Origin: Ophelia neglecta
Taxonomy: Eukaryota
Direction of reading: 5' to 3'
Assembly: GCA_965285935.1 (NCBI GenBank)
Contig: OZ260663.1
Location: 93,124,001-93,188,000 of the forward strand
Length of the DNA: 64,000 bases
The notes below the pieces were generated by a model. The model worked only from the letters and a program-made list of their open reading frames with translations. It ran no database searches and was not told where the DNA came from. The position numbers and the translations under genes are program-made. This document shows, one piece after another, positions 241 through 64,000 of this stretch. Within the stretch, counting starts at the first letter, position 1, and each line of letters begins with the position of its first letter.

Positions 241-345
241 GCCGCAAGCGGAGCGAGTGATGCGCACTGCGTCGGCGCTGCGTTGACCACCCATTGCATT
301 GCGCCGCGGTACGGTGTGCATCGAGTTCTGATACTGACACTACCG
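241..345 (+). promoter_or_regulatory. Conserved upstream element, A1 copy
   Basis: GAGCGAGTG..GCGCACTGCG..CGCT-N7-CCACCCATTGC(287-297)..AGTTCTGATACTGACACT, ending ~130 nt before the ATG; shared by all paralogs. Confidence 0.8.
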
Positions 346-475
346 GTCTGTGAAGGAATACTTCGTTGAACACTGATATAAGGAGCGACAGATAATGATA
401 TGCGGATTAAAATAGGATTACAACAGGATGCTTTATGAAATAGTTCAGTGATTGGAATAAACACCGAATATTAGA

Positions 476-3400
476 ATGGATAAACTGCTGAAGGACTTCA
501 TACTAGGCGTTGTGATCATGGCAATATGGCTACCAACAGCGTGCTCGAGTAAGTAATGTAAATACATTATCATATTCCAAGGAACGCCATTTTGCGCAGT
601 AACCGAGCGTATTGCTCCGCGTGTTAGTATTGCACGGATTGATGGCATGCTTTTAGTGATCTTATCCGTTTTATACGGTTGCTTACAGTTCGGCTTTAAT
701 GCACATTTTTGTGTATGCAATGGACTATTTTTATTTGGGTCATGTTATTTATGTTGGGGAGGGGTGGGGGGGGAGGAACCAGGCACTTTGAACAAATAAC
801 TTTCTACGAGAGTAATATTTTGCATGATATGTATTGAATCAAAATACGTGTATTTTCACATATTTAGTATACAATTTCTCAGAAAAGTGTTATAATGTGT
901 GTTCCTATTGTCATTTACGAAATAAAATTATAAGCAGAATCTACTTAGCATGATATTTTTATAAATCAATCTAACACGATTTTCTTTTAGCATATAACTT
1001 GAGGCTGTCCAAAAAAACTTGGTGCTTGTATGCCCAAAATTAAGTAGAAGCTAACATAAATTTGATTGAAAGTTTATTGGCAAGTATTTCAACGTGTCCA
1101 ACTATTAGGCGTAGGTAAGGGAGTGGATAACCGACAGACAGCGTAAAATATATAATCAGGACGTATCTTTTAACACAGCCCAGAGTCCTTAGGTTCCATC
1201 AGCTGCATGTCCACAAAATTGATTTCCTTAACTTAATGAGCTGTATTTGATGTCATTTGTAATGGGATGAGGATGATTATTACATGAATGGCTATGGAGA
1301 GATTTGTTCATATAAACTGTCAAAGTATGCAGTAATATGATAAAAAACACTCATCGGTTGTATGATTCACCATTGTTGCTTAACGATTTTAGACAGCCCA
1401 CCGCTTGCACTTACTAAATTCCAGTATAATATTTTCAATACACATTTTAGTTGTTGTCTATTACGCTGTCTCGGAACAAAATCGAGGTTGTATAAACCAA
1501 AAACAATACATCCTGAGCATAGCCTGTATTTTTGCAGCAAGGAAAATAATGCGACCACTCGGTTGAAATTTACAGCATATATTACTAAAGTATGGCCAAA
1601 GGGTTTATTAATTGTCATTTGGTATGCAAAGGATTTCTCTAGAAAAAATAATATTCAACGTATTTAAAAAAAAAATTGACTGTCGAATTTCCGTATTGCA
1701 TCGCATTCAATGTAAAGAATTTTTTATATTTTCTTCGCCTGCCGGGAATCCATTCTCGTTTGTCCACATTGTAAATAGCCATGGAATATGTGGTTGCACA
1801 TTCACCTATTCCATGTTAGAACTCGACCCGCGGTGTGGTATATCATGTGATACATATAACTGCTAGTGCAGCGCATCATTGTCAATAGAAAATTCGCACT
1901 CTCTTTTAAAAAATGATATCATTCCATGTTTGGTTCAATGTATAAGGCTTGACTCATGTTTACTACACTATCATTGATCTTTCATTAGGTGCAAATAAAC
2001 AATTAAGGGGGACGTGAAATACTTTTATCGAGTCCCCAAAACAGTAAATACTACAAACTTAATCACGTCACATGTTCAGCAGATTTGTACTCCACTGTGT
2101 ATGATTAATTAAAAATGCATTTTATTTTCATAAATATCTTTTATTTTAAAACTTTAGTCCAAAAATAAACGAGGATAATGGATACATGGGCAGACAAACC
2201 AAATATGAGTAATGTTACCATACTATCGACAGGAAATTCAACAGCCCCCCCCCCTAATTGCAGGCTCAAACATCCAACCCCCCACCCCAACCCCCCTCCC
2301 CCTGTGCCGCCACCACCGAATCGTAACTAAATCCAAACCAGGGCATAATACAACTTGGCACAGTGTGTTAGAGTGAATCTAGTACGCTTTCATTGTGACT
2401 GAACTTAGTTTGATATATACGAATTACACACCAAGGGCCTGCTGATGTGTCTGATTGCATATTTTAATTACTGTAGCAATCTCATCAAGCAGTGTGTCAT
2501 GCGTAAATCTATTTTACACTATACATTTAAGTTTGAATTTCATAAAACTGTTGCGTTTGTAGATAAAACACCAACCTAAATATTGCTAATTAAGACTACC
2601 TCACTGCATAGAAAACAAAGCAACATGTTTATGAAAATTGATAGTTCCTTAGTATATTTATTGTTGAACAACCGATGTAATGAATAGTAGCTGAATACTG
2701 ATTAAGAATAAGCTGCCAGATGTCTTCCCAGGTTCTATAAACCGTTTTTTAACAAGTGTGTTAGCATTCCTGGAGGTTGACAATATAATCAAAGCTGATT
2801 TGAACAGCCACATCTTCCTGTTAATTCCGAACGGGTTTGGTCAGACAAAATAAATGCATTGCCTGCCCCTTTAGATACTAAGTGAAATTAAAGTTTCCGT
2901 TTCGTTTGAAGGAAGGGTCATTGCAAACGGCTCGGTATAGAGTAAGAAATCCCAACAATGTAGACCTTGTTTCAGGGAATCCATATGAATAACTCCGACC
3001 GCTATACATCCCATTAAATAATAATTAATACTAAGATTGTCATTCCAATTTTATTTTTTCTATTTCTTCAAAGTTGGTTCATCACGCAACCCACCGCTAT
3101 CGCACAGGCGTCTTTAATAACATCCTTAATTTGTTTTCATTTCCTGTGTAGGAGAAGATGAAATTTGTTTATGGAGTACATACGATGCTACCTGTGACGA
3201 AAACGAAGTTATTCAAATAGAGCAAGCGTCCTACGGACGGATGTCAGTAGGACGGTGCATCACTGAGGACGTAGCTATCAAGATGGGTTGTCAGGTGGAC
3301 GTGTTGAGTTACTTAGATACGGTATGCTCTGGCAGACAGTCGTGTCAGCTAAGACTACCGCAGGATCATCCAGCATCCGAATATCAACCTTGTCCACGAG

Positions 3401-6156
3401 GGTTGGAGTCATACCTACAGTTGAAATACAGCTGCATAACTGGTAAGGCAAACAAAAAAGGTTTTATATATATGAAAAATGGAATGATCATACAGTCCTT
3501 GGGAAATGGATATAGTATGCAACGGATACGGTGTTTACCGTACCCGATAAGGGGAAGTGCTCATACTAGCCTGGATATATAAACCTAGGTTTATGGCCCA
3601 ATGGTGTTGATTATTGTCCACGCAAACCCTGAATCGGACATACATCATTCTATGCCCATTGTCCGCCTAAAACGGTGATAAAACTCGCAAAATGTGATTC
3701 TCTGGTAAACAATTATGGTTGCCTTTACAGTTAATTGTACTTTTAATTACTCCAGGAAGCCATGGAAATAATCACTAGCACCTATTATGCAGTAAATCTA
3801 AACTAATAGTGACTTTGAAAGTCTTTGGACATAAAGACCAGCGTTTTGTTGTCATTGGGAAGTGAATGGTAATCCGTGATGCACCTAATGGCGATAAATC
3901 AGAATAAACACTGTAGATACCTCTTTTATGTATTTTTATTAGATTCATTACAAGCTTATTTACAGTTATTGGCCTTGGTTCTTCTAGCGGTTTCTAGTCT
4001 GATGGATTATTCTTGCTTAATGATTTTACATTTTTTATGGGTTATGCACAGCCCACTTTTCAATTAACTATCAAGAGGTTTCCTAAGTCTTTAGGTGTTA
4101 TAGACACATTGTTTCGTGCTATCATTGGGATATAATTATTATTCTAGTTAACGCTCCGCCACAGTCGTGCGCCAGTTATCCTATTCCGATCACGGGAACA
4201 TCTGGGTTGCTGGCTAATTTCATAACGGAACGAACTGGTCAGGGATCACAGGAATGTCCCTGGGAGATCCGGGGATCCCCCGGACAAAGAATCCGCCTCA
4301 TATTATATGATTACGGTGTGTGGACGCCTTCTTTGTCCCAAGGAAGCGAATCAGGGATCCATGACCTGGGAGTACGACAACCAGAGAAATCGGATATATG
4401 TCCCATATACGCCCGTGTTACGGAAGGTAAGTCAAGTTTAATCAAGTGATAACTGTGCCCTTCATAGCAATGCTTTTCGGTGTCTAATCAATTTGTTATA
4501 GTAATAATTTGTATACTTTTCTTTGACACTAGGCTCCGCTGAGAGTTCTATACCAATATGTGGGGGCGAGGCAAGGGAGAAAGTAGTATACCTCTCAGAG
4601 ACAGAGGAGCTGCAAATCGCGTTAACTGACCCCAAACACAGTCAGCATTCGGCGTATTTCCTGTTTCGCTACGAAAGTAAGTGAAACGTACTCATATTGA
4701 TTTTGAATAAAACAGTACTTCCCCTATCACATCATTTTACTAATCCCAGATGTATCCCGTCATGCGTAATACCACTGAATTGTTCTTATATCCTTTTAGT
4801 CATAGGATGTTTAACGTACACACCACCAGAGGGTGCTGTAATGGTGAAATATGAAAACTATATAACCGTAACGTGCCCTGATACCGGAAGTGAGTGGAAG
4901 GTGGTATGTGATGGCACAAGGTGGCAAACAGAAGGAAACGTCACAAACTGTACTGAGATTCGTAAGTGCACAAAAGAATAACGAGAAAAACTGCTTTACT
5001 TTTGATTCATATTAATTTATTTATATTCCGAAAAGCAATTATCTCAATTATATTTTAGTTCTTGAAAAAACGGAAGTGGATAAAACGGAAATACCGGTGC
5101 CCGGTGAAGCCCTATTGGAGGGTGGGCTTACCTTATCTCAAGGTGATGAACAAGCACGAGACGTTAGAATGTATGACAGCAATCATTAAAAACGTACCCT
5201 ATTTATTAAAATTCCTTTCTTGCTGTATATATATACACTATATGACTCTTATGGTTGTAGGTAACAGAAAGAACATAGTAATAATATATTGTTGTGTTCA
5301 CTTTTAAAATATATTCTTTTCAAATTCTCCAAATCCTGTTTGTCTCTGTCAGAGGAACTAAATAATACTTCTGTGTGTTTCCAGGACTCGTAATTGCATT
5401 CTTTTTATCAATTGCTGTACTCATAGCGGTCATTATTATGGTGATCGGCATTGTTGTTCTTCGAAGGTATGTGGTGCTTTTCGTCACAAGACTCTTTGAT
5501 CCGATTTACAATCGATTTAAATAAAATTAGTGTTTAACTAGTTTTCCTAGCCTGGCACACGTACAATAATGGGTTGATTTTGTATAAAAATAATAAACTC
5601 TGGGGCTAAACGAAAAAAAAAGAAACAATCGCCAACCTTTTATTCATAAACACGTCTTTGCAGGAGGCAAGATTCAAATATGGGATATAGCAGTAAGGAA
5701 CATTTCCCCATGCTAACAACAGATCAGCGGGAGCAGCAGTCTCTTCGGGACATTCCGGGTTATATTACTACCGCACACCGGCAGGCGGCTGTACCCCCGG
5801 GCGCCGGACCACCTCGTGGGAAATTACCGCCACTACCACCGCCACCGACGTCTTCGTTCACGGAAGTAGGCAACTGTACTATCCACGGGACATCAATCCT
5901 TGGCCGCTATTCGCAGGGTAGTGCCAATACAGCACAATCTTTAATCGATCATAATTTACCTAATGAGTGGACAAGTTCTTTACAGAGCAGGCGCAGTATT
6001 GGTAAAACGAAGAACCATTTCTACCATGAATTGGACCCTGAACATACCAATGTTCGTACCGGGGCTCCACTCGTTCATAAAGATTCCGACTTTGAGAGGT
6101 GTGACTTGGACGAAAACCTGGCCCCTCTTCCTGATGTACTATATGCGTCCTCATAA
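476..6156 (+). CDS. A1: type I membrane receptor, SP + SUEL lectin-like + CUB-like + sushi-like + TM + Tyr/Pro tail (~535 aa)
   Basis: Exons 476-548, 3152-3442, 4148-4426, 4533-4676, 4800-4961, 5059-5142, 5385-5466, 5664-6156. All introns GT-AG; total 1608 nt, in frame. SP MDKLLKDFILGVVIMAIWLPTACS; SUEL YGR..C..C..CSGRQSC..PC..YL..Y.C; CUB-like CPWEIRGSPGQRIRL..CGG..F...Y; TM GLVIAFFLSIAVLIAVIIMVIGIVVL-RR; tail PPLPPPP and HFYHELDP. Confidence 0.88.
585..593 (+). promoter_or_regulatory. YY1/Pho-type motif CGCCATYTT at intron-1 +36/37 (also at 6792, 17433, 34877, 40389, 49706, 58286)
   Basis: Matches the YY1 consensus CGCCATnTT; positionally fixed in all seven complete genes. Confidence 0.65.
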
Positions 6157-6635: not shown

Positions 6636-6683
6636 GTTTGTGCATAATACTTGGTGGAATAGTGGAAGTTACACACAATTACA

Positions 6684-9600
6684 ATGAACATCAAGTTGGA
6701 ATATATTATTCTATTCTTAGTGATTATGGCGATTCGAATACCTACAGGAAGCTCGAGTAAGTACTGCCTGTCATTGTTCAGTTAAAAGAAACGCCATCTT
6801 GAAAACATCAAAATCGGTCCTCGTTTTCAGATCAGATAAATACGTGGTAGCGAGTAATCCTATACAGTCCGTGCAATCATTGGAGTTTTACTTACGTTCA
6901 AATTGCCCCCCAATGTACTGTTGGGCGTGGACTGGACAAGGTTTTTGTTGGTTATGACGCAGTTAGAAATATGGTCAATCTGAGCACCTAGTACTATCTT
7001 CTAAGCAATGTATTATAATTTATTTCAAATAACATTGGCTCTACGCCCCTGAATGTATTTTTTCTGGTCCAAGCACGTTCGTTCCAACACAATACTTAGT
7101 GAATGACAATGAATAGCTAACAAACACGCAAAGTAAATTCTACCTGAAAGGCCACAATTATAGGCAAAAATTCAATTATTTTATTCCATAGATATTATCC
7201 CGTCTCCAATTCAATGCATAGCCAATACTTGTACTTGCCAAATAATATACATGATAACCAATGCATATTGCGTAAGATGTGAACTATGGCAAAATGAGTG
7301 CTATAAAACATTTAGATCCATTATCTATAAGTATTAAGCGCTTAATTATTTTAATAAATTATATATCACAATTTTATGCGTCTAAATTTTTATCTTTAGG
7401 ATTCAATTTGAATGTAAGTTAGTAAAATTTCTTTTACCAGTATCATTTATCCAGTATTATTAAGTCACAATCACATATTCGTTATTAACGGAACTAGGCT
7501 TTTTGAAAAGAGGCAGTGTGGACAAAAGAAAGTGTTTCTAGATGCAACTTGCTTAAATGCACTATTTTCACTTTGTGAAAGCTATAAGACAATAGTTTGT
7601 TGTAGGCTTACCGGAGAAAAAGTTTGGTTGTGGAAAGGGTGGGCTGTACCTCAAAGTTATATACAATGGAGTTGGCTGTTAATACTTGGGCAACTTTTAA
7701 TGTTCATTTTTTTCTGTACATTTTTCTTTATTGAAGTATTCTTCAATTAACGTTTAAAAATTAAGTTTTTGTCCTAAAATAAGTTCTTATTATAAAACTT
7801 GAATCTACATTAAAGAATATAACGGGTTTAAAAACAGATTTATTGGAATATCTATTTCCAATAGTACAACACGCGAAACAGCTTTTAGAATCCATTTTGT
7901 TTCTTAATTACCATTCAAACGTGCAAGCCTCAAAGCATTAGACTAAGAGTGCATGGCCTTTGACCGAGGAGAGTTTTATATACCGAGTAAATATGGCACA
8001 ATACGAACATATAGTACAACTGTATTACGCAAAATGTGCTTAGTACCTATCATGTTAACTCTCTGACACTTATCAATACTCCTAAATTTATCATAACCAT
8101 TTGTAGGAAACAACTATTTGATGGGCCAATGCAAGACTTATGCACGTAGTATAGTACATGGTTGCATAGAAAGTCTATATTACATGTAAATACTTGTCCT
8201 GTGGAGGGTTGTACTAAAATGCAGTCATATTTGTAAATTTTCACTAAGATCGCCATAGTTGACAAAATACCGCCCGTATACAAAGTGAAAGAAGTTATAA
8301 TCGGCATAAGATGCATACTAAAGATAATGTGAGCGAACCGATCCTTGTGTGAACTTCTAGCGTGGAATACTGTTCCGCCTTAGCTATCCTTCCAACAGCT
8401 CTTTACAACAATATCTGAGGTTAATTCTTACTTACATGTATCAGGTTGGTGGTATCAACAAGGATTAATTGGAAAAAAGTGAAGTCAGCCAATGTTTAGA
8501 ATATTTGCAGTACATTTTCTCACCTTTCTATGTACAGTTACGACCAGACAATCATTACTAGATAAAAGGGATGACAGTAAATTATCAAACATTCCACGAA
8601 CGTGAATTGTTAATAAAAAGAAAAGACATTGAATTAACGGTAACGGTGTTAAAGAAATAGCTACAATACATTATGGGATTTGATAGTTAAACCTAAGCCA
8701 CAATACGTTCAGAAAGCAGCCATTTAGTTAACTACCCAATCCAGGTCCCGGAACCTAGGGAGCCATGTATTGACTACAATGAAATATGTCGCAACGTTTC
8801 ATTGGTGGCCTATTGACAACTGGCACGATTATAATACACTGTTATTAAACAAATGGATTGCCCACAAACCGGTCAAAATTGCGAATACGTTTGGATCCAT
8901 GTGTGCCGCAATTAACGTATTGACATATAGATTCGACTATTAACTCTTTCAACAATACAGCCCTCTACAGAGGGCAGATACTCCTTAGTTACAGATACAC
9001 AAAGTTGAAGGGGTTAATAGTTTAGATACTGTATGTAGTTTGTAAATAAGCAAATTTAAACGCTGAGCACGTTCAATCTGACGAAAGTAGCTAGCTGGTA
9101 ACGCGTTGTAATTACACAAAATCAACCGCAAAAGCGATTCTTGCAACTTGTACAGCAAAGGTGTATGTTTTCATTAACTACTGATTGGGTTTAGAACTTT
9201 ATTTTCTGTTTGGGAGCTTGAGCTTAATTTATTGATGCGTGTGGAGCCGTGGCTGCTAGTTCCTGATGATTTCGGACCGACTATTATTGATCAATGATTT
9301 GGCTTTGTTGTCGGGTATCCACTCCAGGTTTTTACAGTGTACATGTATGAGTTGAATCGCCAATACTTCTCCTATGTTAACAGCATTAGTCATTGCACCA
9401 AGTAATACGGCTTTCATATCTCTACGAGCCTTTCAACAAGCATGCTAGAGCTATTGATCAATTTCAGTGGCAAGCATTGCCCTTGGCTGTTTTATTTAGA
9501 AACGATTAGTCATGCTGACCTAGATAAAGACTGGCATGTGGGATGATTACACATTGATACTAGATCTCTTACAAAAGTACAGGCAGGCAACTCAGTTGCT

Positions 9601-34362: not shown

Positions 34363-34550
34363 GTATATGTACTTGGTTTAAATGTCATTGTACCAATGTC
34401 AAATAAAGAAAACAATGCTGTTAATTAATTCCAGCACACATACACAAAGGCACACACACAGAAAAAAAAATAGCTTTGTAGAATTATTTTGAAATACGCT
34501 TTGCATATTCTGTACCCTTTGCATCATTCTCCAATAGAATTGCAATTGGT

Positions 34551-37700: not shown

Positions 37701-39329
37701 TGTTTCAAAATACTCTAGACATAAATGTCAAATAAATAACCTCAATTCCTTCCAAAATATACTCATTCAGCTATTCATACATTAAAGACACACTCTTACA
37801 ATTTCAGTCATAGGGTGTCTTACGTACATCCCACCAGAGGGCGCTGTTATTGTGCGATATGATAACGATATATCGGTATCATGCCAAGCTACCGGAAGTG
37901 AGTGGAAAATGGTGTGTGATGGGACCCAGTGGCGAACAGAAGGAAACGTCTCCAATTGTACTGAAATACGTATGTACAAAAAATTAGTGGTGGCAGAAAA
38001 CATGTTTGCCGTGGATTTTATATTAATTTGTATTCAATCCAATATATCTCACACACAAAAGCAGAACTAATATCAACAAGCAGGTTACAAAAACAACTTA
38101 GTATAAGCGATTGTGTTTTAGGCAATAAACAAACGGTAGTGGAGAATGGTGAGCAGTCCGTGTCCATGGAAACAGTCTTGGAGGGTGGCCTAACTTTATC
38201 TCAAGGTGATGTACAAATGTGGATTAAAAAATAAAAGCAACATCCTATAAAAACGTTTTCTGCATGGATATGAAGTTAGCGGTACTCACAGCACGTTCAG
38301 CATCTGGCTAATATTGGTGGTATGAAATTTACCAACAGGTATCACTTGCCTTTGTTGGACTATTAATTGCTTCGACATTGACACTAATAAGGCTCCTCAT
38401 GTTTCCAGGACTGGTCATTGCATTCTTTTTATCAATTGCTGTACTCATAGCGGTCATTATTATGGTGATCGGCATTGTTGTATTGCGAAGGTAAGAGCTG
38501 CTTTAAGTCACCAGATTCTTTGATTCGATTTCCACAGGAATATCTTTATCCATTTTATAATTTACAATGTATGGATGTATATTTGAACTATATTGCAAGT
38601 TTGCTTTCAAGTATGGCATAATTGTAAAGCAAGTATTTCGCTTTTCGAAACAGGACTACGATGTAATTTCCCCATAAATTACTTTTTTTATTCATAAAAT
38701 TAAGTACTCGATTTTATAGCCTGTCTTACCCAAACATCATATGGCAAGCTGCATAAAAAATTAGAAATCATGCGCCTTATGTCTCATAAACATGTCTTTG
38801 TAGAAGGCAGGACACCGTCATAGAATCAACTCCGGGGTATAACTGCAAAGAACATGTCCCCATGCTGACAAAACATCAGTGGGCACAGCAGTCTCTTGGG
38901 AATAGGAGTTATACTACTACCCCTCAGAGACAGGCGGCTGTCCCATCAGGCACCGTGACACATCGAGGGAAATTTTCGCCACTACCACCACCACCAACTT
39001 CATCATTCCAAGAAGCCGGACACTGTACCATCCACGGAACACTAAGCCGTGACCGTTATCCTCAGGGTAGTAACCCGACAACGCAGTCTATCATGGATCA
39101 GAGTTCGTCCAATGACTGGCAGAATTCCGTACGTCGCACTGACAGGAACGCTAAAGACAAGGACCATTTCTACCACGAGTTAGACCCGGAACAAATCAAT
39201 GTTCACGCCGGGCCGCCACTGGATCAGAAGGAACTCGACATCGAAAGATTCGGCTTGGACGAACACGTTGCCCCTCTTCCCGATGTTCTGTCCAAGTCCT
39301 CATTAGGGCAGAGCAACTATGATGTTTAA
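34771..39329 (+). CDS. A3: subfamily A paralog (~541 aa)
   Basis: Exons 34771-34840, 36609-36899, 37015-37278, 37502-37648, 37808-37969, 38122-38205, 38409-38490, 38804-39329; total 1626 nt, in frame. Confidence 0.88.
35988..36080. mobile_element. Helitron/Helentron-like end fragment
   Basis: ggcggccatcttg..ccgatc followed by GC hairpin atgcctccg-N12-cggaggcat (36048-36077). Confidence 0.4.
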
Positions 39330-52500: not shown

Positions 52501-55500
52501 TCCTTCAGGAACACTCTGAACCCATCGGAGATGAGCAGTTGGTGGTCACTTGCCCTTAGCTGTCCTGGGGCCCTCCCTGCCTGTAGGCTGATGGTGAAGA
52601 GCGCCCTGGAGGGCGTCGACTCTGAGGTAGTAACTGGCAAATACGAGGACACTCCGCGCCAGCTAAGAATTTGTAAACTGTGTAGGTCAGCAGTAGAGGA
52701 CACTCTACACTTCCTGTTGGAGTGCCCCACTTTAACTGAGGAAAATAGGTGGCTTTGCGATCGACTGGCCGAGTGCGGCATAGCAGACTCGGAGGCGCTG
52801 TTTTGGGTGCTAACCGCTTGTGAGAGGCTGGAGGGCGTGTCAGTATCCGAGGCAGTTTTCAAGTCATACTCGAGTAGGGCCAGAAAGCTTCTATGTATAT
52901 CTCCGTGATAACTGTATATCCTCGTGTTGTCCGTGTGATGCAAACGGAATGTAGCATCAACCTACCTATATGCCTGTATATATATATTTTCCCTTAACTA
53001 ACCGAATGTTGTAAACCTTATTGTAGTGTGCTGACGTAGTGTTATTATTATGGATATGTTTTTTTTCTCCCTCTCTTGTATTATTACTCTCCATGCTGGA
53101 GGAATAAAGAAAAAAAAACAAAAAAAACAACACACTTTATATATAAATATATACTTATATATTCCCCAATGTGTATATTCACCACTGTGGGACTATTAAG
53201 AAATCAAAAGACGCCGTGTCTAAGGTATACAGACAATGGTGGTAGGCAAGTAAGAGACTGTGTTTCATTAATTTCCGAAAATTAAAATTGCATAGGCAGT
53301 AAATTAACACTCAATTTCCTTTTTATTCTTTATTTATAGAAGAACAGGATGTGTGTTTTTGGAAAACATACGAACTTACCTGTGACCAAAACGAAGTTAT
53401 ACAAATGTCGCATGCTTTGTACGGACGGATGGCGGTAGGGAGCTGTATACCGGAGGCTTTGAGGATGGGGTGTCAGGTGGACGTATTGGAACACTTGGAC
53501 TCCGTTTGCTCTGGGAGACAGTCGTGTCAGCTAAGGTTGCCACAGGATGACATTGCTACAGCACAACAACCTTGTCCACGAGGATTAGAGGCATACCTAC
53601 AGTTGGAATACAACTGCATAACGGGTAAGTCAAACATAGATTTTAACGTCTCACGAATTATATTTACACCAGGCTGAAGCCATGGCTGGTAATCTAAAAG
53701 CAGCCCACTTCATCTATTATTATTGCGCAAAATCATTTTAGATATTATTTCTATTTCCAGTACACACCTCGCCAACGCCGTGCGCTGGAAGCCCCATACC
53801 AGTCAAAGGATCCAATGGGCTACTGGCAAATATTATAACAGAACTGACTGGTCAGGGATCTCAGGTATGTCCCTGGGAGGTTAGAGGCTCTCCTGGACAG
53901 AAGGTCCGCCTCACATTATATGACTACGGTGTATGGAACCCTCCCACGACCGAAGGGGGCGTCTCACAGCCAGAAATCCGGCGACCAAAGAAGACAGATA
54001 TATGCCACATATACGCAAGACTAACAGAAGGTAATTCAAGCTTGAACAGAATTTTATTTGTATTTCCTGTTAATGGAATGGCATTTGGTGGTCTGCTATA
54101 CAGTATTAGTTGCTATACAGTATTAGTTGCTATACAGTATTAGTTGTTAAAGAATACAGCCATGAGTAGACTGTATTTTATTTGTGCTATTAATTATAAT
54201 TGCGTTCCCTTTTTGTATTGGTTATATTTCTGTTTCATCAGCAGATCACACTGAGAGTTCCATCCCCCTTTGTGGGGGCGAGGCACGAGAGAAAGTAGTT
54301 CACCTTTCAGAGACAGAGGGCTTGTATATCGCCTTAACTGACCCTAAACATAGTCCAAACGCCGCGTACTTCGTACTTCGTTACGAAGGTGTGTGGTATT
54401 TTTAAAACATATGCATCTACCCTTTACTTTATTGACAATCTTTGAAACAACGCATGTCAGAGACATAATTGCTAAAATATTGACATAAATTCAGTTGATC
54501 TAGTCATTCAAAGATTCATAATCTAATGTATATATGAAAATGTTATATCATTGATAATTCTCTTGACATTCCAGTCCTAGGATGTCTTACTTACATACCG
54601 CCAGAGGGCGCTGTTATTGTGCGACGCCATAACGATATATCAGTGACGTGTCCAGATACCGGACATTTCTGGAATGTTGTGTGTGATGGGACAAAGTGGC
54701 AAGCAGAAGGAAACGTCACCAACTGTACTAAAACTGAGATAAGTCGAAGTAAGTAGAAAACTTCAAAGCAGAAACAAGCATGCTTTTGCTGTTTATTGTT
54801 TTAAAAATTTCACGTACAACTTTATATCCATACAAACAACAGAAACAATATAAACAAAAATGTTGCAAATTCTTACGAGGAATTTTATTTAGAACCAAAA
54901 AGGACGGGAATGGATAAAAGAGAGCCGCCCGTGTCAAGTGAAGCGGTAATGGAACGTGGCCTTAACTTATCTCAAGGTGATGATCAAGTACAAAATGTTG
55001 ACTAGAATATAAAATAACAACCCAAAATAGCGCATAATTTTCATTTGATAACTTTCTTTTTAAGCATGCGCAATAGGTAGGATCAAACTTTTCTAAATAA
55101 CACATTCATCAACTGTCTAATTTGTCTATTGTAAAAATGAAATACTAGTAACCAGTAAACATTTTCGAATATTTTCCATATTTAAACCACATACCCTCTG
55201 TATATTTCCAGGACTAGTGATTGCATTCTTTTTATCAATGGCTGTACTCATAGCAGTCATCATCACAGTGGTTGGCATTGTTGTACTTCGAAGGTGAATT
55301 AAGTATTCTGTCATATAACTTTTTGATAAGATTTTCTCGGAGAAATAACTCAGTAATCTAGGCATAAGCAACTGTTTTCGATTTACTCTATATTAAAACA
55401 TATTTCAGGTAATGTCCAGTAATGAGGTTTTCGTACGATAAAGTTGAATCTAAAATTGAAAAGCCTAAAGCGCTGAAGAAAATAAAATTAAAAAACTTAA

Positions 55501-55986
55501 ATTTACCAAAAATGTCGTTTCAGAAGGCAAGACACAGTAGTGGAATCAACTCCCGGATATAGCTGCAAAGAACATTTTCCTATGCTTACAAAAGATCAAA
55601 GGGAGCAGCAGTTTATCCCGGACAGGGGTTATACTAGTACAGTACACAGGCACGGGGCTGTCCCTCCGGGCGCCATGACACAACGTGGACAATTTCTCCC
55701 GCTCCCACTACCCCCGTCGTCGTCGCTCCCACAGGGCGACCACTGTACAATCCTTAGGACGCTTGGCCAAGACCGCTACCCGAGGGTTAGTAACCAGACA
55801 ACACAACCATGTAATGACTGGCCAAATTCTTTGCGGCGTACACGCAGTAACGACAAAACCAAGAATCATTTCTATCACGAATTGGACCCAGAACATATCA
55901 ATGTTCACTCTGGGACACCACTGGATGACAAGGAATTCGCCATCGAACCGTCCAACGTGACCCCTCTTCCTGATGTCCTGTCCTGA
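49598..55986 (+). CDS. A4: subfamily A paralog (~524 aa), LINE in intron 1
   Basis: Exons 49598-49670, 53340-53624, 53761-54030, 54245-54388 (or 54242, CAGCAG tandem acceptor), 54575-54748, 54893-54976, 55212-55293, 55524-55986; total 1575 nt, in frame. Confidence 0.88.
51592..53130 (+). mobile_element. 5'-truncated non-LTR retrotransposon (C-terminal RT, CCHC knuckle, 3'UTR, A-rich tail)
   Basis: 438-aa open frame with YADD, W...FNPKKS, HLGI, LLYGLE and CKLC-x7-H-x4-C. AATAAA plus A-rich tail at 53103-53130. Sharp GC increase. Absent from paralogous A5 intron 1. Confidence 0.92.
54095..54145 (+). repeat. 17-bp tandem repeat x3 (gctatacagtattagtt)
   Basis: Three perfect units in A4 intron 3; single unit at the paralogous A5 site (~61213). 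Confidence 0.9.
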
Positions 55987-56413
55987 AGATGAACATTAAA
56001 AATAAATACGTCTTCAGTTTACAATAGTGGGTGATCAAACTGCTTATAGTCATTTACGAATTGAAACTATTCAAGATTATATCAATATTGTTATGTACAC
56101 AAGTTAAACACTTAGAATATATTCCATTCCCTTTCTACAAGAAAGCATAGTTCTTGGAGTTCGTTTATTTGACGTTAGCACTGTCTTGTTCGTAAGGATT
56201 TTTACAAGTAGATGACTATTCTCTGGAAAATGAAGACAACCTACTTCACGGATGAAGCACTGTGGGTTTTTAAGAAAAGCATCTTGCCTAGTGCCATTTA
56301 AGGCATAATGACCTTTTCACCACATTGGATATAGGTTACGTTAAGGGCTGATGTATGATGTTACCTTTGCTTATTAAAAATCATCATTTCTCTCCGGCCA
56401 TTTTAGGCGACAG

Positions 56414-57185
56414 TCATAGGGTGTCCGAAATACATCCCACCAAAAGGCGCTGTGGCAGAGAAGCAGAGTAACGAGATTTCCGCAAGATGTTCCAATTCTG
56501 GAATAGGATGGCGCTCGTCGTTTAGCCGCTAATCAATCATATTTCAATTTTCATACGACAAGCTATATAAACCCAAACTAAACACTATATTTCGGAATAC
56601 TTTTGAGGGATTCTCGTTGTGATAATCATAGCCGCTGCCATTATCATATACTTGTGATTGGCATTAATAGTTTTCGCAGGTCAGTTTTATATTTGTCATA
56701 TCCGGGACCTACTGCTAAAGAGCACGACCCCATGCCGGTCACACACGTGAGATACTCTCAAAGGAAGGGAGTATACATCTACTCCAAACATACACGGATC
56801 TGTGCGTCCCGATGCGGTAACACCTGATGGAGGATTTCCGCCTCTGTCTTTCAGATTGACGTCATCATACCTGGACACGGAAAGTACCAATCACGTGAAA
56901 CCAAGTCAACAGTGCCGACTGCGTGACAATAACCAAGCTACACTCCAACGACCTTACACAGAACATTAATATGAATCGCCGAAGGTCATACGGCGCACGC
57001 GCAGTACGAGTGACCCTAGTGATCCGTTTTACCGCGAATTAGATTCGAAACACATTCGGATTTCATTGTAATCTGCCACACGAGTCGGATCGCTTTATGG
57101 AGTCGGATCGGACCGGTCCCATCCGTGTCCACACGGCCAGGGCAAATTAGCTGATACCGGGGCCAGAGGAGGTGACCACGTTTAA
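56414..57185 (+). pseudogene. psiB 3' remnant (partial exon 5, TM exon, tail exon)
   Basis: IGCPKYIPPKGAV matches B2 exon 5. Degenerate TM exon ~56605-56680. Frameshifted tail with YESP and DPFYRELD relics. No promoter or exons 1-4. Confidence 0.85.
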
Positions 57186-57940: not shown

Positions 57941-58046
57941 GCCGCAAGCACAGCGAGTGCGGCGCACTGCGCCGGCGCTGTGTGTGCCACCCATTGCACC
58001 GCGCGGCGGTACAGTGTACACCAAGTTCTGATACTGACACTTCCAG
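57941..58046 (+). promoter_or_regulatory. Conserved upstream element, A5 copy
   Basis: Core at 57987-57997. Confidence 0.8.
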
Positions 58047-58176
58047 ATTGTGAAGGAATACTATGTGGAATTCAGATATTTTGTTAGGCAGATGATTATA
58101 TGAGCATTACACGCTTAAGATTTTAGTTTGGTGTTGCATGAAAGAGGGTATCCTTTGGACAATACACGGCTTTGCC

Positions 58177-61100
58177 ATGGATATACTGCAAAAAGCAATC
58201 ATTCTACGTGTTGTGATATTGGCAACATGGCTTTCAACAGTAGGCTCGAGTAAGTACTGTAAATACATTATCATATGACCAGGGACGCCATCTTGCGCAC
58301 GTAGCGACCATATTTCTCTGTGTGTTAATATTCCGAGGATGGCTGGCACCTTGTTATGTCCCACATTTGTGCAATAATTATGCTCACAGTAAGCTGATAA
58401 TGTTCAATATTTTGTTTAAAAAGAACTATTTTATAGTGGTAATATTATGTATGTTGGGGAAATGGAACGGTGAATATGTTTTTGCAACTTCCTCGATAAG
58501 CATGCAAATACATATATTGTTTCTAAACCAATTCTAACGAAAGTGCATCTCTGACGGTTTACTGAAATATATTTGCATCCGGCGTCTGCATGTCTGTGAT
58601 TTAGCTGGTTGAACATTACACCCTTGGGCTAATTCACCTTATTGACCAAGGTTAGCTTTCTTTTACTTCTGTCCCCTTTCTTATATTAAACGCAAATTCT
58701 ACTCCTGAAAACCACTTGGGCAAACTGATTGTTATTCTAAAAACAAAATAGATATTTGATGACTCCTTCCAATGTACACGAATTAAAAGGAAATATATCA
58801 ATTTTCTATAAGCACAGTATCGCTAATACCATGGGTACCATATATTTTATGTTCTCATCCAGTTTCAACGTTTCATCTTCTGTCCTTTTAAAGTTAATAC
58901 AAATGTAAATTGCTATAGGCCTAATATCGATAAGTAGATAAAAACAATTTTTGATAGATTAAATTTTGTTGGTAAAGGCAATTTAACCCGTATTAAGAAT
59001 GTCACACTAAAATTATTTTGGCGTTATGGTACTTTTTTTGATAATAAAAAACATTTTATAAACATTCATGTAATGGGCATCACGTCTCTTTTTTAATTTA
59101 TAAATGAATTTACAGACTACGGTAAATCAAGCAATACCCCTGTTGACTAAGTTAACCCACTAAACTGTACTGGTCTCATTACAGCAATTCTTAGATATTT
59201 GGTTGAAACTATAAATAGTATATACGTAATTAATTATTGGGAACAATACGTTTTTCCATTTCGTCTGATATAAACAGGTTGGGGTCTTAGGCATCGTAAT
59301 GTATTGGCTTTTAAAGAAAATTGCGCGATGTAATTGATAGTTTGTTTGCATAACCCTTACATTTTTATACATATGTGTACAAGGAACATACATGTTTGAA
59401 TTGATCACGCAGCGATAATTGTTACTTATACGTGTTTATATTTGTACTGGACTGGACTAACAGGAACTATAATATTAAAATATCTGGTGCCAAACAAACA
59501 CGTGGCTATTTAGACCAGTTTCATGACCATGTTATGCATTTACAAATTCCACCATACATACAAAACAGTATGATCCGTGTTGAACTGGATCAATTACCTG
59601 TGTAATCCTCATTAACCCGTGTTTGGTTTTTATAGTAACGGCGGTTGAATGAGTGTACTCCAGTGTGTCTTTTTGATTGAGTTTGCACCAGCGAGAGAGC
59701 ATTTCTACATATAACATGATTAGACAAACACGCTATTTATGTATTTGTTTAAACACAGTGAGATAAAACCAGGGCGGGTGGGGGGGGGGGGGGGGAGGGG
59801 TATCCCTTTTTATTAATCATTGTTGTTTCTTATCTGTTCTAATACTGCAGTGCCTACAGCAAACATATTTATTTATATATGCAAATTTATTGGGTGCAGT
59901 AGTCATTCAATTTTCAAAGCACCACTCAAAACCAAGATTTTGAAACAACTACAAACATATATGGATGTTTTACCGAGCATATGAAACATTGTTTGTGCTT
60001 TTCATTCGGTTCACCCAGTTTGGTACTCACACATACTAACATAGTCATTTGGGCTGGACTTATTTATTCATGTAATCGTAACGGAAGGGGAAAAATATAC
60101 ATGGACTATATTAAGTATGGTAATGTTTTAGAAGGGAACTACCAAGAAATAAGGTTATGTGCTAATGCCAGATACATGCGCCTGGCGGCTGGTTATGGGC
60201 CTTTTGTTCGTCCATACGTTCTGCCAAAGATTACCTAACATATCAGTTCCAACGCATATTTATTAAAAACCCTAACCAATGTCTGATGGTCTGTATAAAA
60301 GATATGCGATTACTTTTATTAAGGTCGCTTATTACGGTCGAGGCAATGGCCGCAGTGATGTTGGGGACGAGGAATCTTATTTAGTTAATATCTACAATTA
60401 GATAACCTAGACAGACAGTAAATGGGCACTACAATTCAAATATAGATTTTTGTTCTTTTATAGAAGAACTGGAAGTTTGTTTTTGGCGAACATACGAACT
60501 AACCTGTGACGAAAACGAGATTATACAAATGGAGCAAGCTCTGTACGGACGGATGGAGGTAGGGACCTGTATACCGGATGCTCACAAAATGGGATGTCAG
60601 GAAGACGTATTGGAGCACTTGGATTCGGTTTGCTCTGGGAGGCAGTCTTGTCAACTAAGGTTGCCACAGGATGAGATAGCTACCGCACATCAACCTTGTC
60701 CACGAGGGTTAGAGGCCTACCTAAAGTTGGAATACAACTGCATATCTGGTAAGTCAAACACAGATGTCCACGTCTCACTAATTATATTTATACCGGGCTG
60801 GAGCAGCAGGAAGTGATTGAAAAACAGCCTGCTTCCAGTATTATTATTGTCCAATTACTATTTAAATATTATTTCTAGTACTCACCTCACCAACGCCATG
60901 TGCCGGTAACCCAATACCAATCAAGAGTCCCACTGGGCTATTGGCAAATATTATAACGGAATTGACTGGTCAGGGATCTCAGGAATGTCCCTGGGAGGTC
61001 AGAGGCTCTCCTGGACAGAAGGTCCGACTCACATTATATGACTACGGTGTATGGAACCCTCCCACGACCGAAGGGGGCGTTTCACAGCCGGAAATCCGGC

Positions 61101-63129
61101 GACCAGAAAAGACGGATATATGCCATATATACGCAAGACTCGCAGAAGGTAATTCAAGATAGAATGGAATTACAATTGAATTCTATTGGAATGACATTTG
61201 TTGGCTGACGGCTGCTATACAGTATTAGTTATTTAAAATACAGCCAGGTATGAAAAGGAGTCGACGTTGACATAAAGAAATGATTTAGTTTTCCACTCCC
61301 TGTCGAAAAGCCCACTGTTTATGTTATTTGTGCTATTAATCATAATTACGTTACTTACTTATATTACTTATATATCTGTTACATCGGCAGATAACACTGA
61401 GAGTTCCATTCCCCTTTGTGGGGGCGAGGCACGAGAGAGAGTAGTTCACCTTTCGGAGACAGAGGGCTTGTATATCGCCTTAACTGACCCGAAACACAGT
61501 CAGAACGCGGCGTACTTCGTACTTCGTTACGAAGGTGAGTGATAATTTCAAACATATACATCTAACCGTTTTATTCTTATGACAATATTTGAAAACACGC
61601 ATGTCAGAGACATAATTGTTAAAACATTGACCTAATTTAAGTTGAACTAGTCATTCAACGATTCATAAAATAATGTATATATACAAATGTTATATCATTG
61701 ATAAGCCTCTTATCATTCCAGTCGTAGGGTGTGTTACTTACATACCACCAGAGGGCGCTGTTATTATGCGACACCATAACGATATATCAGTGACGTGTCC
61801 AGATACAGGAAATTTCTGGAATGTGGTGTGTGATGGGACAAGGTGGCAAGCAGAAGGAAATGTCACAAACTGCACTAAAAAAGAGATAAGTCGAAGTAGG
61901 TAAAAAAATCTTCTAAGCAGAAACAAATACGTTTTTGCTGTTTATTCTTAAATTCCACGTTCACCTTTATATCCATACAAACAACAGAAACAATATAAAC
62001 CAAAATGTTGCAAATTCTTATTTAGTACCAAAAAGGACGGGAGTGGATAAACGAGAGCCGTCCGTGTCCAGTGAAGCGGTAATGGAACGTGGCCTTAACT
62101 TATCTCAAGGTGATGACAAGTAGAAAATGTTGACTAGAATATAAAAATAACAAACCAAAATTGCGCATAATTTTCCTTTGATGACTTTCTTTTTCTGCAT
62201 GCACAATAGGAAGGAATTAAACTTTTCTAAATAACAAATTCATCAACTATCTAATTGGTCTATTGTAAAAATGTAATACTAATGATCAGTAAAAAAAAAG
62301 TCGTATGTTCTAGTTTCGATATTAACACTAAATACCCTCCGTTATTTTCCAGGACTGGTGATTGCATTCTTTTTATCAATGGCTGTACTGATAGCAGTCA
62401 TCATCACAGTGGTTGGCATTGTTGTACTTCGAAGGTGAATTATTAAGTATTCTGTCATATAACTTTTGATAAGATTTTCTCGGAGAAATAACTCATGTAA
62501 TTCAGGCATGAGCAACAGTTTTCGATTTACTGTATATTAAAACATGTTTCAGGTAATGTCCAATAATGAGGTTTTCGTACCATAAAGTTGAATCTGTATA
62601 AAAAAGCCTAAAGCGCTGAAGAAAATTAAATTAAAAAACTTAAATTTACCAAAAATGTCTTTTCAGAAGGCAAGACACAGTAATTGAATCAACTCCCGGA
62701 TATAGCTGTAAAGAACATTTTCCTATGCTTACAAAAGATCAAAGGGAGCAGCAGTTTATCCCGGACAGGGGTTATACTAGTACAGCACACAGGCACGGGG
62801 CTGTCCCTCCGGGCGCCATGACACAACGTGGACAATTTCCCCCGCTCCCACTACCCCCGTCGTCGTCGCTCCCACAGGGCGACCACTGTACAATCCATAG
62901 GACGCTCGGCCAAGACCGCTACCCGAGGGTTAGTAACCAGACAACACAACCATCTAATGACTGGCCAAATTCTTTGCGGCGTACACGCAGTAACGACAAA
63001 ACCAAGAATCATTTCTATCACGAATTGGACCCGGAACATATCAATGTTCACTCTGGGACACCACTGGATGACAAGGAATTCGCCATCGAACCGTCCAACG
63101 TGGCCCCTCTTCCTGATGTCCTGTCCTGA
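58177..63129 (+). CDS. A5: subfamily A paralog (~524 aa), closest to A4
   Basis: Exons 58177-58249, 60464-60748, 60879-61148, 61391-61534, 61722-61895, 62026-62109, 62353-62434, 62667-63129; total 1575 nt, in frame. Confidence 0.88.
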
Positions 63130-63579
63130 AGATGAAGATTAAAAATAAATGCGTCTTCAATTTACAATAGTGGGTGAACAAACTGCTTATAGTCATTTAC
63201 GAATTGAAACTATTCAAGATTATATCTATATTGTTATGTACACAAGTTAAACACTTAGAATATATTCCATTCCCTTTCTTCAAGAAAGAATATTTCTTGG
63301 AGTTCGTTTATTTGACGCTAGCACTGTCTTGTTCGTAAGGATTTTTACAGGTAGATGACTATTCACTGGAAAATGAATACAACCTACTTCACGGATGAAG
63401 CACTGTGGGTTTTTAAGAAAAGCATCTTGCCTAGTGCCATTTAAGGCATAATGACCTTTTCACCAGAGTGGATATAGGTTATGTTAAGGGCTGATGTATG
63501 ATGTTACCTTTGCTTATTAAAAATCATCATTTCTCTCCGCTGTTTGTGATGAATCTAAGGCGGCCATTTTAGGCGACAG

Positions 63580-64000
63580 TCATAGGGTGTCCGAAATACA
63601 TCCCACCAAAAGGCGCTGTGGTCGAGAACCAGAGTAACGAGTTTTCCGCCAGATGTTCCAATTCTGGAATAGAATGGCGCTTGTCGTTTAGCCGCTAATC
63701 AATCATATTTAAATTTTCATACGACAAGTTATATTAACCCAAACTATAAACACTATATTTCCGAATACTTTTCTGGGATTCTTATTGTGATAATCATAGC
63801 CGCCGCATTTATCATAGCAGTCCCTACACTTGTGATTGTCTTCATTAGTTTTCGCAGGTCAGTTTTACGTTTATCATTACATGTGTCTGTTTACTACGTA
63901 TGTCGGTTGATTATCAATGTATCAGAAGTTTTACTTATATTTGTCGTATCCGGGACCTACTGCTAAAGTGTACGACCCCATGCTGGGTACACACGTGAGA
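63580..64000 (+). pseudogene. psiB 3' remnant, duplicate of 56414-57185, runs off window
   Basis: Same junction (ggccattttaggcgacag) and same truncated exon 5 as the 56.4 kb copy. TM exon acceptor lost (ttctg|ggatt). Confidence 0.82.

What the first reader, a model, noticed from the sequence alone, without database searches (positions are those of the whole stretch)
241..64000. Alternating A/B tandem array of SUEL-CUB-sushi-TM signalling receptors: candidate paired cell-recognition system
Seen: seven complete genes plus five relics, all co-oriented, in strict A-B alternation, so the duplicating unit is the A+B pair. The subfamilies differ consistently in SUEL (A: CQ.DVL..QPCPRGLE.YL; B: CKR.VL..EPCPRMMSYL), TM (B has a mid-helix Pro) and tail motifs. 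B copies decay repeatedly while A copies stay intact. Known: tandem, birth-and-death, Tyr-motif receptor clusters underlie allorecognition (Hydractinia Alr), paired immune receptors and neuronal self-avoidance (clustered protocadherins, chelicerate sDscam). SUEL+TM proteins such as EVA-1 and the latrophilin RBL domain act in guidance/adhesion. I know of no characterised family with this exact architecture. Inference: a diversified self/non-self or cell-identity receptor code, possibly A:B co-receptors or many variable A with few B.
Basis: partly seen in the sequence, partly recalled or inferred. Interest (0 to 1): 0.9.

Follow-up and report, generated by a model that had tools for sequence, protein, structure and literature searches.

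The report
Interleaved two-type lectin receptor gene array
Two related kinds of uncharacterised cell-surface receptor gene alternate along this stretch because a two-gene unit was copied again and again and one partner then mostly decayed; nothing testable here shows that the two kinds work as a pair.

Summary
The array is real. The window holds five clean 8-exon A genes (524-541 aa), two B genes with lesions (B1 has a GC splice donor, B2 lacks 1 nt at the start of the tail exon) and six relic pieces, all on the + strand. Types alternate perfectly in the window and over 26 elements in the 264 kb I could read, with one A-A exception.

The window is part of a cluster of about 98 genes (C5:92.53-93.62 Mb). 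Other windows of this genome carry notes on the same family.

B is a 100/100 clade closer to neighbouring "C" genes than to A. A groups with eight upstream genes that have no intact B between them.

Pairwise dS of each B matches that of the A just upstream (Mantel r 0.72), and a 7.1-7.5 kb [A + B-relic] unit is triplicated at 87% identity. The alternation is therefore best explained by duplication of a two-gene unit, then preferential B loss.

All domains are under purifying selection (omega 0.13-0.44). A and B tails carry the same motifs, and neither helix has a charged residue. Obligate A:B pairing is disfavoured. A recognition code is untested, because no RNA or population data were available.

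The parts
26..142 (+). B-type exon-1 (signal-peptide) relic with its start codon lost; all that remains of a B gene between the A gene left of the window and A1
   Evidence: nhmmer hit to the exon-1/promoter module. The peptide VNTLLEYFVLVLAKMAIW carries the B signature NT.LEY.
476..6156 (+). Gene A1, 8 exons, 535 aa: 476-548 signal, 3152-3442 SUEL, 4148-4426 CUB-a, 4533-4676 CUB-b, 4800-4961 sushi-like, 5059-5142 stalk, 5385-5466 TM, 5664-6156 tail
   Evidence: GT-AG sites, phases consistent, all exons open; SUEL Pfam E 5.3e-11
6684..15300 (+). Gene B1: exon 1 6684-6756, SUEL 11731-12018, CUB-a 12675-12953, CUB-b 13350-13493 (GC donor), sushi-like 13793-13954, stalk 14152-14214, TM 14454-14535, tail 14754-15300
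   Evidence: SUEL Pfam E 5e-12; donor reads GAAG|GCGAGT where the paralogs have GT
17327..22676 (+). Gene A2, 8 exons, 528 aa
23797..23942 (+). B-like exon-1 module relic
   Evidence: nhmmer hit; peptide MNTLLKYYSLMLVIKMMW
27572..28081 (+). A-type tail-exon relic; no other exons of this gene remain
   Evidence: 67% identical to the A2 tail; class means A 0.60 versus B 0.34
32780..34403 (+). B relic: SUEL (3 stops), CUB-a (1 stop) and sushi-like exons; exon 1, TM and tail are missing
   Evidence: 65% identical to B SUEL versus 49% to A
34771..39329 (+). Gene A3, 8 exons, 541 aa
40281..48220 (+). Gene B2: all 8 exons present, but the tail exon (from 47666) lacks 1 nt relative to B1, B3 and B5. 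With the homologous splice sites this gives a tail-less product. The frame is kept only with a weak donor 4 nt further on.
   Evidence: tail omega still 0.22-0.35
49598..55986 (+). Gene A4, 8 exons, 525 aa; intron 1 carries a reverse-transcriptase fragment at 51571-52905
56410..57053 (+). B relic: part of the sushi-like exon plus a tail fragment with a stop
58177..63129 (+). Gene A5, 8 exons, 524 aa; recent copy of A4 (unit 87% identical)
63501..64000 (+). B relic (sushi-like fragment, TM exon, tail fragment), running on to about 64291 beyond the window; a copy of the relic at 56410
   Evidence: 89-91% identical to the 56410 relic

Best explanation
These are genes for type I membrane receptors. 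Each has a signal peptide, one divergent SUEL/rhamnose-binding-lectin domain, one CUB-like domain split over two exons, one sushi/CCP-like domain, a short stalk, a highly conserved membrane helix and a cytoplasmic tail of about 165 residues with proline-rich and tyrosine motifs. Each gene has its own promoter and first-exon module.

The window lies in the one sector (about 93.10-93.24 Mb) of a cluster of about 98 genes where two old subfamilies are interleaved. The interleaving is a by-product of how the array grew. An ancestral unit of A followed by B was repeatedly duplicated in tandem, presumably by unequal crossing-over between paralogous copies (the mechanism is inferred), which automatically preserves alternation. 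Later, B copies were lost far more often than A copies, and units consisting of A plus an already dead B went on duplicating.

Inferred, not shown: A and B act as separate ligand-binding surface receptors of the same signalling type, most likely an innate-immune or environmental-sensing repertoire, rather than as obligate partners.
For: - Gene models: 8 exons, GT-AG, phase-1 introns around the domain exons, open frames of 524-541 aa for A1-A5.
- Domains: SUEL by Pfam above threshold and by PDB profile (SUL-I E 3e-20, LAT-1 RBL E 3e-11). CUB-a exon: the only three PDB profile hits are CUB domains, 5 of 28 exons hit Pfam CUB weakly, and 27 of 30 nearest ESM clusters are CUB. Sushi exon: four-Cys and Trp pattern, model pLDDT 84, best PDB matches mostly CCP modules.
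- Every gene has a homologous exon-1/promoter module.
- Clades: B 100/100; A+U1-8 100/99; B is nearer to C and U0 than to A.
- Pair as the unit: dS between B genes matches dS between the A genes just upstream (mean 0.71 versus 0.66; Mantel r 0.72, 4 of 120 permutations as high), but not the downstream A genes (r -0.21). [A + B relic] units of 7.1-7.5 kb are 87% identical at 53320, 60447 and 67930.
- Asymmetric loss: 8 of 13 B versus 1 of 13 A positions are relics (Fisher P 0.011). Both B genes in the window carry lesions.
- Constraint: omega 0.13-0.44 in all domains and 0.13 in the A helix. The tail motifs PPLP and NHFYHELDPEH show no replacement changes among the 20 A and U genes.
Against: - No transcript evidence at all, so expression, splicing and the status of B1 and B2 are unverified.
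- The dS match rests on only five pairs within a narrow dS range. Exon-wise mosaic dS (for example A4-A5: SUEL 0.40, tail 0.03) shows recombination or gene conversion, which blurs the trees. The B2-B5 branching is unresolved.
- CUB identity is below significance at exon level, and the half-domain did not fold (pLDDT 47).
- The immune or sensing role is inferred only from the kind of family and its expansion. The lectin head has lost two of the three RBL signature motifs (motifs as in PMC10817417), so sugar binding is doubtful.
Confidence: 0.55

Rival explanations
1. A and B are subunits of one heteromeric receptor. A few B chains serve many variable A chains, and assembly goes through the two sharply conserved, distinct membrane helices.
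For: Two helix classes are each kept almost unchanged across paralogs with dS of about 0.5-1. A and B were co-duplicated. Intact B genes are still under purifying selection (omega 0.19-0.29). B exon 1 lies only about 0.5-1 kb behind the A stop codon.
Against: - The B-type helix with Pro is shared by C genes and U0, which are not interleaved with A.
- U1-U5 A-type genes have no B trace.
- Most B copies are dead, and both B genes in the window are damaged.
- The tails carry the same motifs, so there is no division of labour.
- The helices have no charged residues of the kind that drive known receptor-adaptor assembly.
Confidence: 0.12
2. The array is a cell-identity or allorecognition code. Each cell, or each individual, shows a subset or an allele set, and the ectodomains bind in a paralog-specific way (protocadherin-, sDscam- or Alr-like).
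For: About 98 tandem genes each have their own conserved promoter module. The ectodomains differ by 20-45% between paralogs, with indel-rich loops in SUEL and CUB. There are conserved cytoplasmic motifs.
Against: - There are no shared constant exons: each gene ends in its own tail and stop.
- No domain or window shows omega clearly above 1.
- There are no Ig or cadherin domains.
- Polymorphism and per-cell expression could not be examined.
Confidence: 0.08
3. Paired activating/inhibitory immune receptors: A and B see the same ligands and signal in opposite directions, as in KIR, Ly49 and LILR.
For: Two receptor types are interleaved in one birth-and-death cluster, with tyrosine motifs in the tails.
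Against: - A and B ectodomain exons are only about 44-58% identical, not near-identical.
- Both have long tails with the same F-Y-x-E-L and PPLP motifs.
- Position -2 of the Tyr motif is H or P, not I/V/L/S as in an ITIM.
- Neither helix has a charged residue.
Confidence: 0.03
4. The array is largely non-functional duplicated DNA: recently amplified genes drifting towards pseudogenes.
For: There are many relics, both B genes have lesions, an RT fragment sits in an intron, and there is no RNA evidence.
Against: The A genes keep open 8-exon frames with intact splice sites despite dS up to about 1. Omega is 0.13-0.44 everywhere. The tail motifs and the helix are nearly invariant.
Confidence: 0.05

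Closest known systems
Rhamnose-binding / SUEL lectin domains (sea-urchin SUL-I, fish CSL, latrophilin RBL)
   Same: Significant profile matches (5H4S E 3e-20, 8SUF E 3e-11, latrophilins 1e-5 to 5e-4). Eight conserved Cys and the YGR motif are kept.
   Different: There is a single domain at the head of a single-pass receptor. DPC reads QPC or EPC, and KYL reads SYL (motifs per PMC10817417). There is no olfactomedin, GAIN or 7TM part.
EVA-1 / EVA1C (SUEL-domain single-pass guidance co-receptors; from my own knowledge)
   Same: Type I membrane protein with a SUEL-type head and a cytoplasmic tail.
   Different: EVA-1 proteins have two SUEL domains and no CUB or CCP, and are single or few-copy genes. 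Here there is one SUEL plus CUB plus CCP in about 98 tandem copies.
CUB-plus-CCP surface and complement proteins (MASP/C1r/C1s, SEZ6, CSMD; from my own knowledge, with PDB matches)
   Same: A CUB is directly followed by a CCP module. The sushi-exon model matches MASP-1, CR1 and factor H CCP modules, and the CUB-a profile hits cubilin, NETO2 and TSG-6 CUB domains.
   Different: There is no protease domain and no repeated CUB-CCP units. There is a lectin head, and the tail is not found outside close relatives (11 short hits in 1.8 billion proteins).
Lineage-specific birth-and-death receptor clusters of invertebrates (Hydractinia Alr, sea-urchin SRCR and TLR expansions; from my own knowledge)
   Same: A large co-oriented tandem array, relics among intact genes, recent unit duplications, and exon-wise mosaicism.
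   Different: Different domains. There are two interleaved subfamilies co-duplicated as a unit. Diversifying selection was not detected, and polymorphism is unknown.
Clustered protocadherins
   Same: Each copy is preceded by a conserved promoter element.
   Different: There are no shared constant exons: every gene has its own TM and tail exons and its own stop. These are not cadherin domains.

Membership tests
SUEL / rhamnose-binding lectin domain (PF02140) | Pfam model matched above the gathering score | tested here: met
   43.2 and 46.5 bits against a cut-off of 31.4
SUEL / rhamnose-binding lectin domain (PF02140) | Eight conserved cysteines and the YGR motif | tested here: met
   C5, C14, C35, C58, C64, C80 and C94 invariant and C46 nearly so; Y27 and G28 invariant, R29 nearly invariant, in 26 paralogs
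SUEL / rhamnose-binding lectin domain (PF02140) | DPC and KYL motifs of sugar-binding RBL domains (PMC10817417) | tested here: not met
   QPCPRGLESYL in A and EPCPRMMSYL in B. The Asp and the Lys are replaced.
SUEL / rhamnose-binding lectin domain (PF02140) | Binds L-rhamnose or D-galactose | not testable with these tools
   needs a glycan array or haemagglutination assay
CUB domain (PF00431) | Significant match to the CUB model or fold | tested here: inconclusive
The domain is split over two exons. The first exon gives only sub-threshold matches, all to CUB: PDB E 0.16-1.4, Pfam in 5 of 28 exons with best E 0.05, and 27 of 30 ESM neighbour clusters. The second exon alone gives nothing. The half-domain model has pLDDT 47.
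Sushi / CCP module | Four Cys with a conserved Trp, and the CCP beta-sandwich fold | tested here: met
   Cys-Cys-Cys-Trp-Cys pattern, invariant or nearly so. Model pLDDT 84. Most of the top 50 PDB matches are CCP modules, TM 0.5-0.58, but E is only 0.4-3 because the domain is 53 aa. Pfam sushi is not matched by sequence.
EVA-1 / EVA1C | Two tandem SUEL domains as the ectodomain | tested here: not met
   One SUEL exon per gene, followed by CUB and CCP exons
Latrophilin / adhesion GPCR | GAIN domain and seven membrane helices | tested here: not met
   There is one 27-residue hydrophobic exon, and the 8-exon model of 524-541 aa leaves no room for them.
Clustered-protocadherin-type locus | Variable exons, each with a promoter, spliced to shared constant exons | tested here: not met
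   Own promoter module: yes. Shared constant exons: no, since each gene has its own tail exon and stop.
Paired activating/inhibitory receptors (KIR, Ly49, LILR type) | Near-identical ectodomains; one partner with an ITIM tail, the other with a short tail and a charged TM residue | tested here: not met
   A and B ectodomain exons are about 44-58% identical. Both have long tails with the same motifs. There are no charged residues in either helix.
Allorecognition clusters (Hydractinia Alr type) | Extreme allelic polymorphism and isoform-specific homophilic binding | not testable with these tools
   Only DNA contigs of one sample were available.

The most novel reading that the evidence does not exclude
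The A and B proteins form a modular heteromeric receptor in which a small set of B chains (Pro-kinked helix) pairs, through the two invariant membrane helices, with any of many A chains. The co-duplicated A+B unit would then be a functional cassette, and the cluster of about 98 genes, each with its own promoter module, would be expressed one or a few genes per cell as an annelid recognition repertoire.
Probability: 0.1. Interest if true: 0.8.

Novelty: new variant of a known kind. Interest (0 to 1): 0.5.

Why it matters
It documents a very large receptor family of unknown function (about 98 tandem genes here, more elsewhere in the genome). I found its SUEL-CUB-CCP-TM architecture in no paper.

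It also gives a clean case of how a two-gene unit propagates and then decays asymmetrically. The practical lesson is that alternation of two gene types in an array does not by itself indicate functional pairing.

If transcript and population data later show one-gene-per-cell expression or high polymorphism, the cluster would become a candidate recognition system in annelids, a phylum for which I know of no characterised recognition locus.

Tried and rejected
The phylogeny therefore covers 264 kb only.
- Tail-exon profile against 1.84 billion proteins: only 11 short fragments, no full-length relative.
- SUEL exon against 5.8 billion proteins: 9 exon-sized fragments. Their contigs (L022-L026) show the same SUEL, CUB, sushi exon order but at about 30-48% identity, too distant to test A/B synteny.
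- RNA runs: none hold this DNA.
- Read laying on three runs of one sample gave short DNA contigs. The 'joints' do not fall on GT-AG boundaries, so I read them as paralogous contigs, not spliced RNA.
- CUB-a half-domain fold: pLDDT 47, not used.
- CUB-b exon profile against the PDB: one chance hit.
- Pfam on sushi exons: nothing.
- An automatic exon modeller on all 30 genes failed on variable anchors. Completeness is therefore claimed only for the seven window genes and B5.
- Accession look-up of GCA_022702875 and GCA_022702835 in papers: nothing.
- Literature searches for the architecture: no paper.
Exons were searched one by one by reference. Exon alignments were concatenated only inside scripts, for the tree and for dN/dS.

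Full report
**What is in the window**

A six-frame self-comparison shows repeated blocks of + strand reading frames. Pfam recognises the first block of each unit as a SUEL/rhamnose-binding lectin domain (E 5.3e-11 for A1, 5e-12 for B1). By aligning the paralogous frames and reading the flanks, I placed canonical AG/GT sites at homologous positions.

An upstream exon encodes a signal-peptide-like start: MDKLLKDFILRVVIMAIWLPT... in A and MNT.LEY.IL..VI.AIWIPTGSS in B. It ends in a consensus GTAAGT donor in phase 1. Each gene therefore has eight exons:
- signal peptide
- SUEL
- CUB-a
- CUB-b
- sushi-like
- stalk
- TM
- tail

All introns are phase 1 except the TM/tail intron, which is phase 2.

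For A1-A5 the phase arithmetic gives open ATG-to-stop models of 535, 528, 541, 525 and 524 aa. The two B genes are less clean:
- B1 has GC instead of GT at the donor of its CUB-b exon.
- B2 lacks one nucleotide within the first 12 nt of its tail exon compared with B1, B3 and B5. The homologous splice sites then give a stop after RRQAR. Only a weak donor 4 nt downstream keeps the frame.
- B2's tail still shows omega 0.22-0.35, so any damage is recent or is bypassed.

**Domain identities**

- SUEL is secure. The profile matches SUL-I (E 3e-20), C. elegans LAT-1 RBL (3e-11) and latrophilins. The eight Cys and YGR are kept. The DPC and KYL signatures described for sugar-binding RBL domains (PMC10817417) read QPC or EPC and SYL, so classical sugar binding is doubtful.
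- The CUB call rests on sub-threshold but concordant evidence for the first half-domain exon. The only three PDB profile hits are the CUB domains of cubilin, NETO2 and TSG-6. Five of 28 exons hit Pfam CUB weakly. Twenty-seven of 30 nearest named ESM clusters carry CUB.
- The second CUB half alone finds nothing, and the half-domain does not fold (pLDDT 47).
- The sushi-like exon has the four-Cys and Trp pattern. It folds with pLDDT 84, and its best PDB matches are mostly CCP modules (MASP-1, C6, Crry, CR1, factor H), with TM 0.5-0.58 but non-significant E-values for a 53-residue query.

**The wider setting**

The window is G000:C5:93,124,001-93,188,000. A search of the genome with the A1 SUEL exon finds 98 matches between 92,533,163 and 93,616,559, spaced 6-8 kb apart. 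They lie on the minus strand up to about 92.93 Mb and mostly on the plus strand after it. More copies lie elsewhere on C5, C2 and C1.

In these 264 kb the order is as follows (square brackets mark relics):
1. U0, then U1-U8, which are A-type. U1-U5 have no B trace. A B-type exon-1 relic precedes U7 and another precedes U8.
2. [B tail relic], Am3, [B relic], Am2, Am1, [B exon-1 relic].
3. A1, B1, A2, [B exon-1 relic], [A tail relic], [B relic], A3, B2, A4, [B relic], A5, [B relic].
4. A6, B3, A7, [B relic], A8, B4, A9, B5.
5. Five 'C' genes.

Counting from the first B relic to B5, 13 A and 13 B elements form 25 runs (exact P = 2.5e-6). In the window alone, 13 elements alternate perfectly (P = 5.8e-4).

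**Are A and B separate clades?**

Yes. A maximum-likelihood tree of 31 genes was built on concatenated exon alignments of 467 columns. Exon alignments were concatenated only inside the script, and relics were left out.
- B is a 100/100 clade.
- A plus U1-U8 is a 100/99 clade, with U6-U8 nested among the interleaved A genes.
- B groups with the C genes and U0 rather than with A (100/99).

The membrane helices follow the same split:
- GLVIAFFLSIAVLIAVII.V.GIVVLRR in all 20 A and U genes, with omega 0.13.
- GILI.IIIAAA.IIAVPI.VIGI.SFRR, with a mid-helix Pro, in B, C and U0.

The Pro is therefore real, but it is an old feature of the non-A lineage and not a B speciality.

**Is the pair the duplicating unit?**

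Three observations say yes.
1. Synonymous distances between B genes match those between the A genes lying just upstream of them. The pairs are A1/B1, A3/B2, A6/B3, A8/B4 and A9/B5. Mean dS is 0.71 versus 0.66, the mean absolute difference is 0.08, and Mantel r is 0.72, with 4 of 120 permutations as high. The downstream A genes do not match (r -0.21).
2. B1 is the outgroup of the other B genes, just as A1's group is to A3, A6, A8 and A9.
3. DNA-level repeats of 7.1-7.5 kb at 87% identity cover A4 plus its B relic, A5 plus its B relic, and A6. Units kept duplicating after B had died. The two relics at 56410 and 63501 are 89-91% identical copies of one decay event.

Unequal crossing-over between copies of a two-gene unit preserves alternation automatically, so no functional pairing needs to be invoked. 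That mechanism is inferred, not shown.

The test is weak in one respect. There are only five pairs, and exon-wise dS is mosaic (A4-A5: SUEL 0.40, tail 0.03; U1-U3: SUEL 0.41, CUB-a 0.014). This points to recombination or gene conversion among neighbours.

**Selection and decay**

All domains are under purifying selection in A, U, B and C (omega 0.13-0.44). A sliding 9-codon scan finds only a few windows near 1. They lie in the CUB loop, the SUEL loop and the distal tail, and none is convincingly above 1.

The tail motifs PPLP.PP and KNHFYHELDPEH (DPFYRELD in B) and the C-terminal PLPDVL show no replacement changes among the 20 A and U genes.

B is lost preferentially. Eight of 13 B positions are relics, against one of 13 A positions (Fisher P 0.011; not fully independent). 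Both B genes in the window carry lesions.

**What this says about function**

These are genes under selective constraint for single-pass surface receptors, with a protein- or glycan-binding ectodomain and a tail suited to SH2/SH3-type or sorting interactions. The tail function is an inference from motifs.

Against obligate A:B pairing:
- Most B copies are dispensable.
- A-type arrays exist without B.
- The B-type helix also occurs in C genes that are not interleaved.
- The two tails carry the same motifs.

Against an activating/inhibitory pair:
- The ectodomains are only about 44-58% identical.
- Both tails are long.
- Neither helix has a charged residue.

Against a protocadherin-like locus: there are no shared constant exons, although each gene has a conserved promoter module.

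A recognition code, or 'few B for many A', remains possible but untested. No RNA run holds this DNA. The three available runs are DNA contigs of one sample. Their depth peaks on the TM exon and the promoter module only because those are the most conserved parts among paralogs.

**Novelty**

I found no paper describing this architecture. The tail has only 11 short matches among 1.84 billion proteins, and SUEL-exon relatives are unannotated fragments.

Earlier notes of this scan describe the same family on neighbouring and distant windows and call it annelid. I did not verify the phylum. New here are:
- the interleaved two-subfamily sector;
- the evidence that the A-then-B pair was the unit of duplication;
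- the asymmetric decay;
- the lesions in B1 and B2.

I rate it a new variant of a known kind (a lineage-specific birth-and-death receptor cluster), of moderate interest.

Noticed in passing
window 326-687, 6616-6864, 17201-17535, 34631-34980, 40212-40398, 49455-49807, 58026-58388: Every gene, A or B, is preceded by a homologous module of about 350 bp. It holds an upstream block (CTGATACTGACACTACCAG...), the signal-peptide exon with a GTAAGT donor, and an intronic block GGGACGCCATCTTGCGCA that contains a YY1-like GCCATCTT core. The module is as well conserved as the coding exons.
   Followed up: partly
G000:C5:92,533,163-93,616,559 (outside the window): There are 98 SUEL-exon matches in one cluster. 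Copies up to about 92.93 Mb are on the minus strand and most copies beyond it are on the plus strand, so the two arms point away from each other. Further copies lie at C5 34.8-35.2 Mb and 67.9-68.1 Mb and on C2 and C1.
   Followed up: partly
window 53340-55986 versus 60464-63129; L002/L003: Synonymous divergence between recent copies differs strongly by exon (A4-A5: SUEL 0.40, CUB-a 0.34, tail 0.03; U1-U3: SUEL 0.41, CUB-a 0.014). The SUEL exon is usually the most diverged. This looks like recombination or gene conversion with breakpoints in the introns.
   Followed up: partly
window 5385-5466 and the homologous TM exons: The membrane helix is the most conserved coding part (omega 0.13; nearly identical in the 20 A and U genes). 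Public DNA contigs pile up on it and on the promoter module (depth 302 and 466 against about 20-100 elsewhere). A helix this constrained suggests a specific contact within the membrane.
   Followed up: partly
window 51571-52905 (+): A 445-codon open frame inside intron 1 of A4 has a weak reverse-transcriptase match (RVT_1, E 4.7e-5, below the Pfam cut-off). It is probably a truncated non-LTR retroelement.
   Followed up: partly
L006:4390-4523 and L007:1034-1121: B-type exon-1 relics (ITILLKYFILILVIMAIWIQT, no start codon) lie about 0.5 kb upstream of the exon-1 modules of U7 and U8. The A/B interleaving therefore once reached at least 45 kb further left than the last recognisable B body.
   Followed up: partly
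L022, L023, L024 (ENA ERZ25084518); L025, L026 (GCA_022702875.1, GCA_022702835.1); L021 (TARA metagenome scaffold): Public contigs of other organisms carry SUEL, CUB-a and sushi-like exons in the same order at about 30-48% identity. On L023 there are two units 8.3 kb apart. The family and its tandem habit therefore exist beyond this genome. The organisms are not named in the records I could read.
   Followed up: partly
window 23797-34403: Between A2 and A3 lie a B exon-1 relic, then an A tail relic, then a B relic lacking exon 1, TM and tail. This fits either one deletion fusing the 5' end of a B gene to the 3' end of an A gene, or an A fragment inside a long B intron. I could not decide which.
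   Followed up: no
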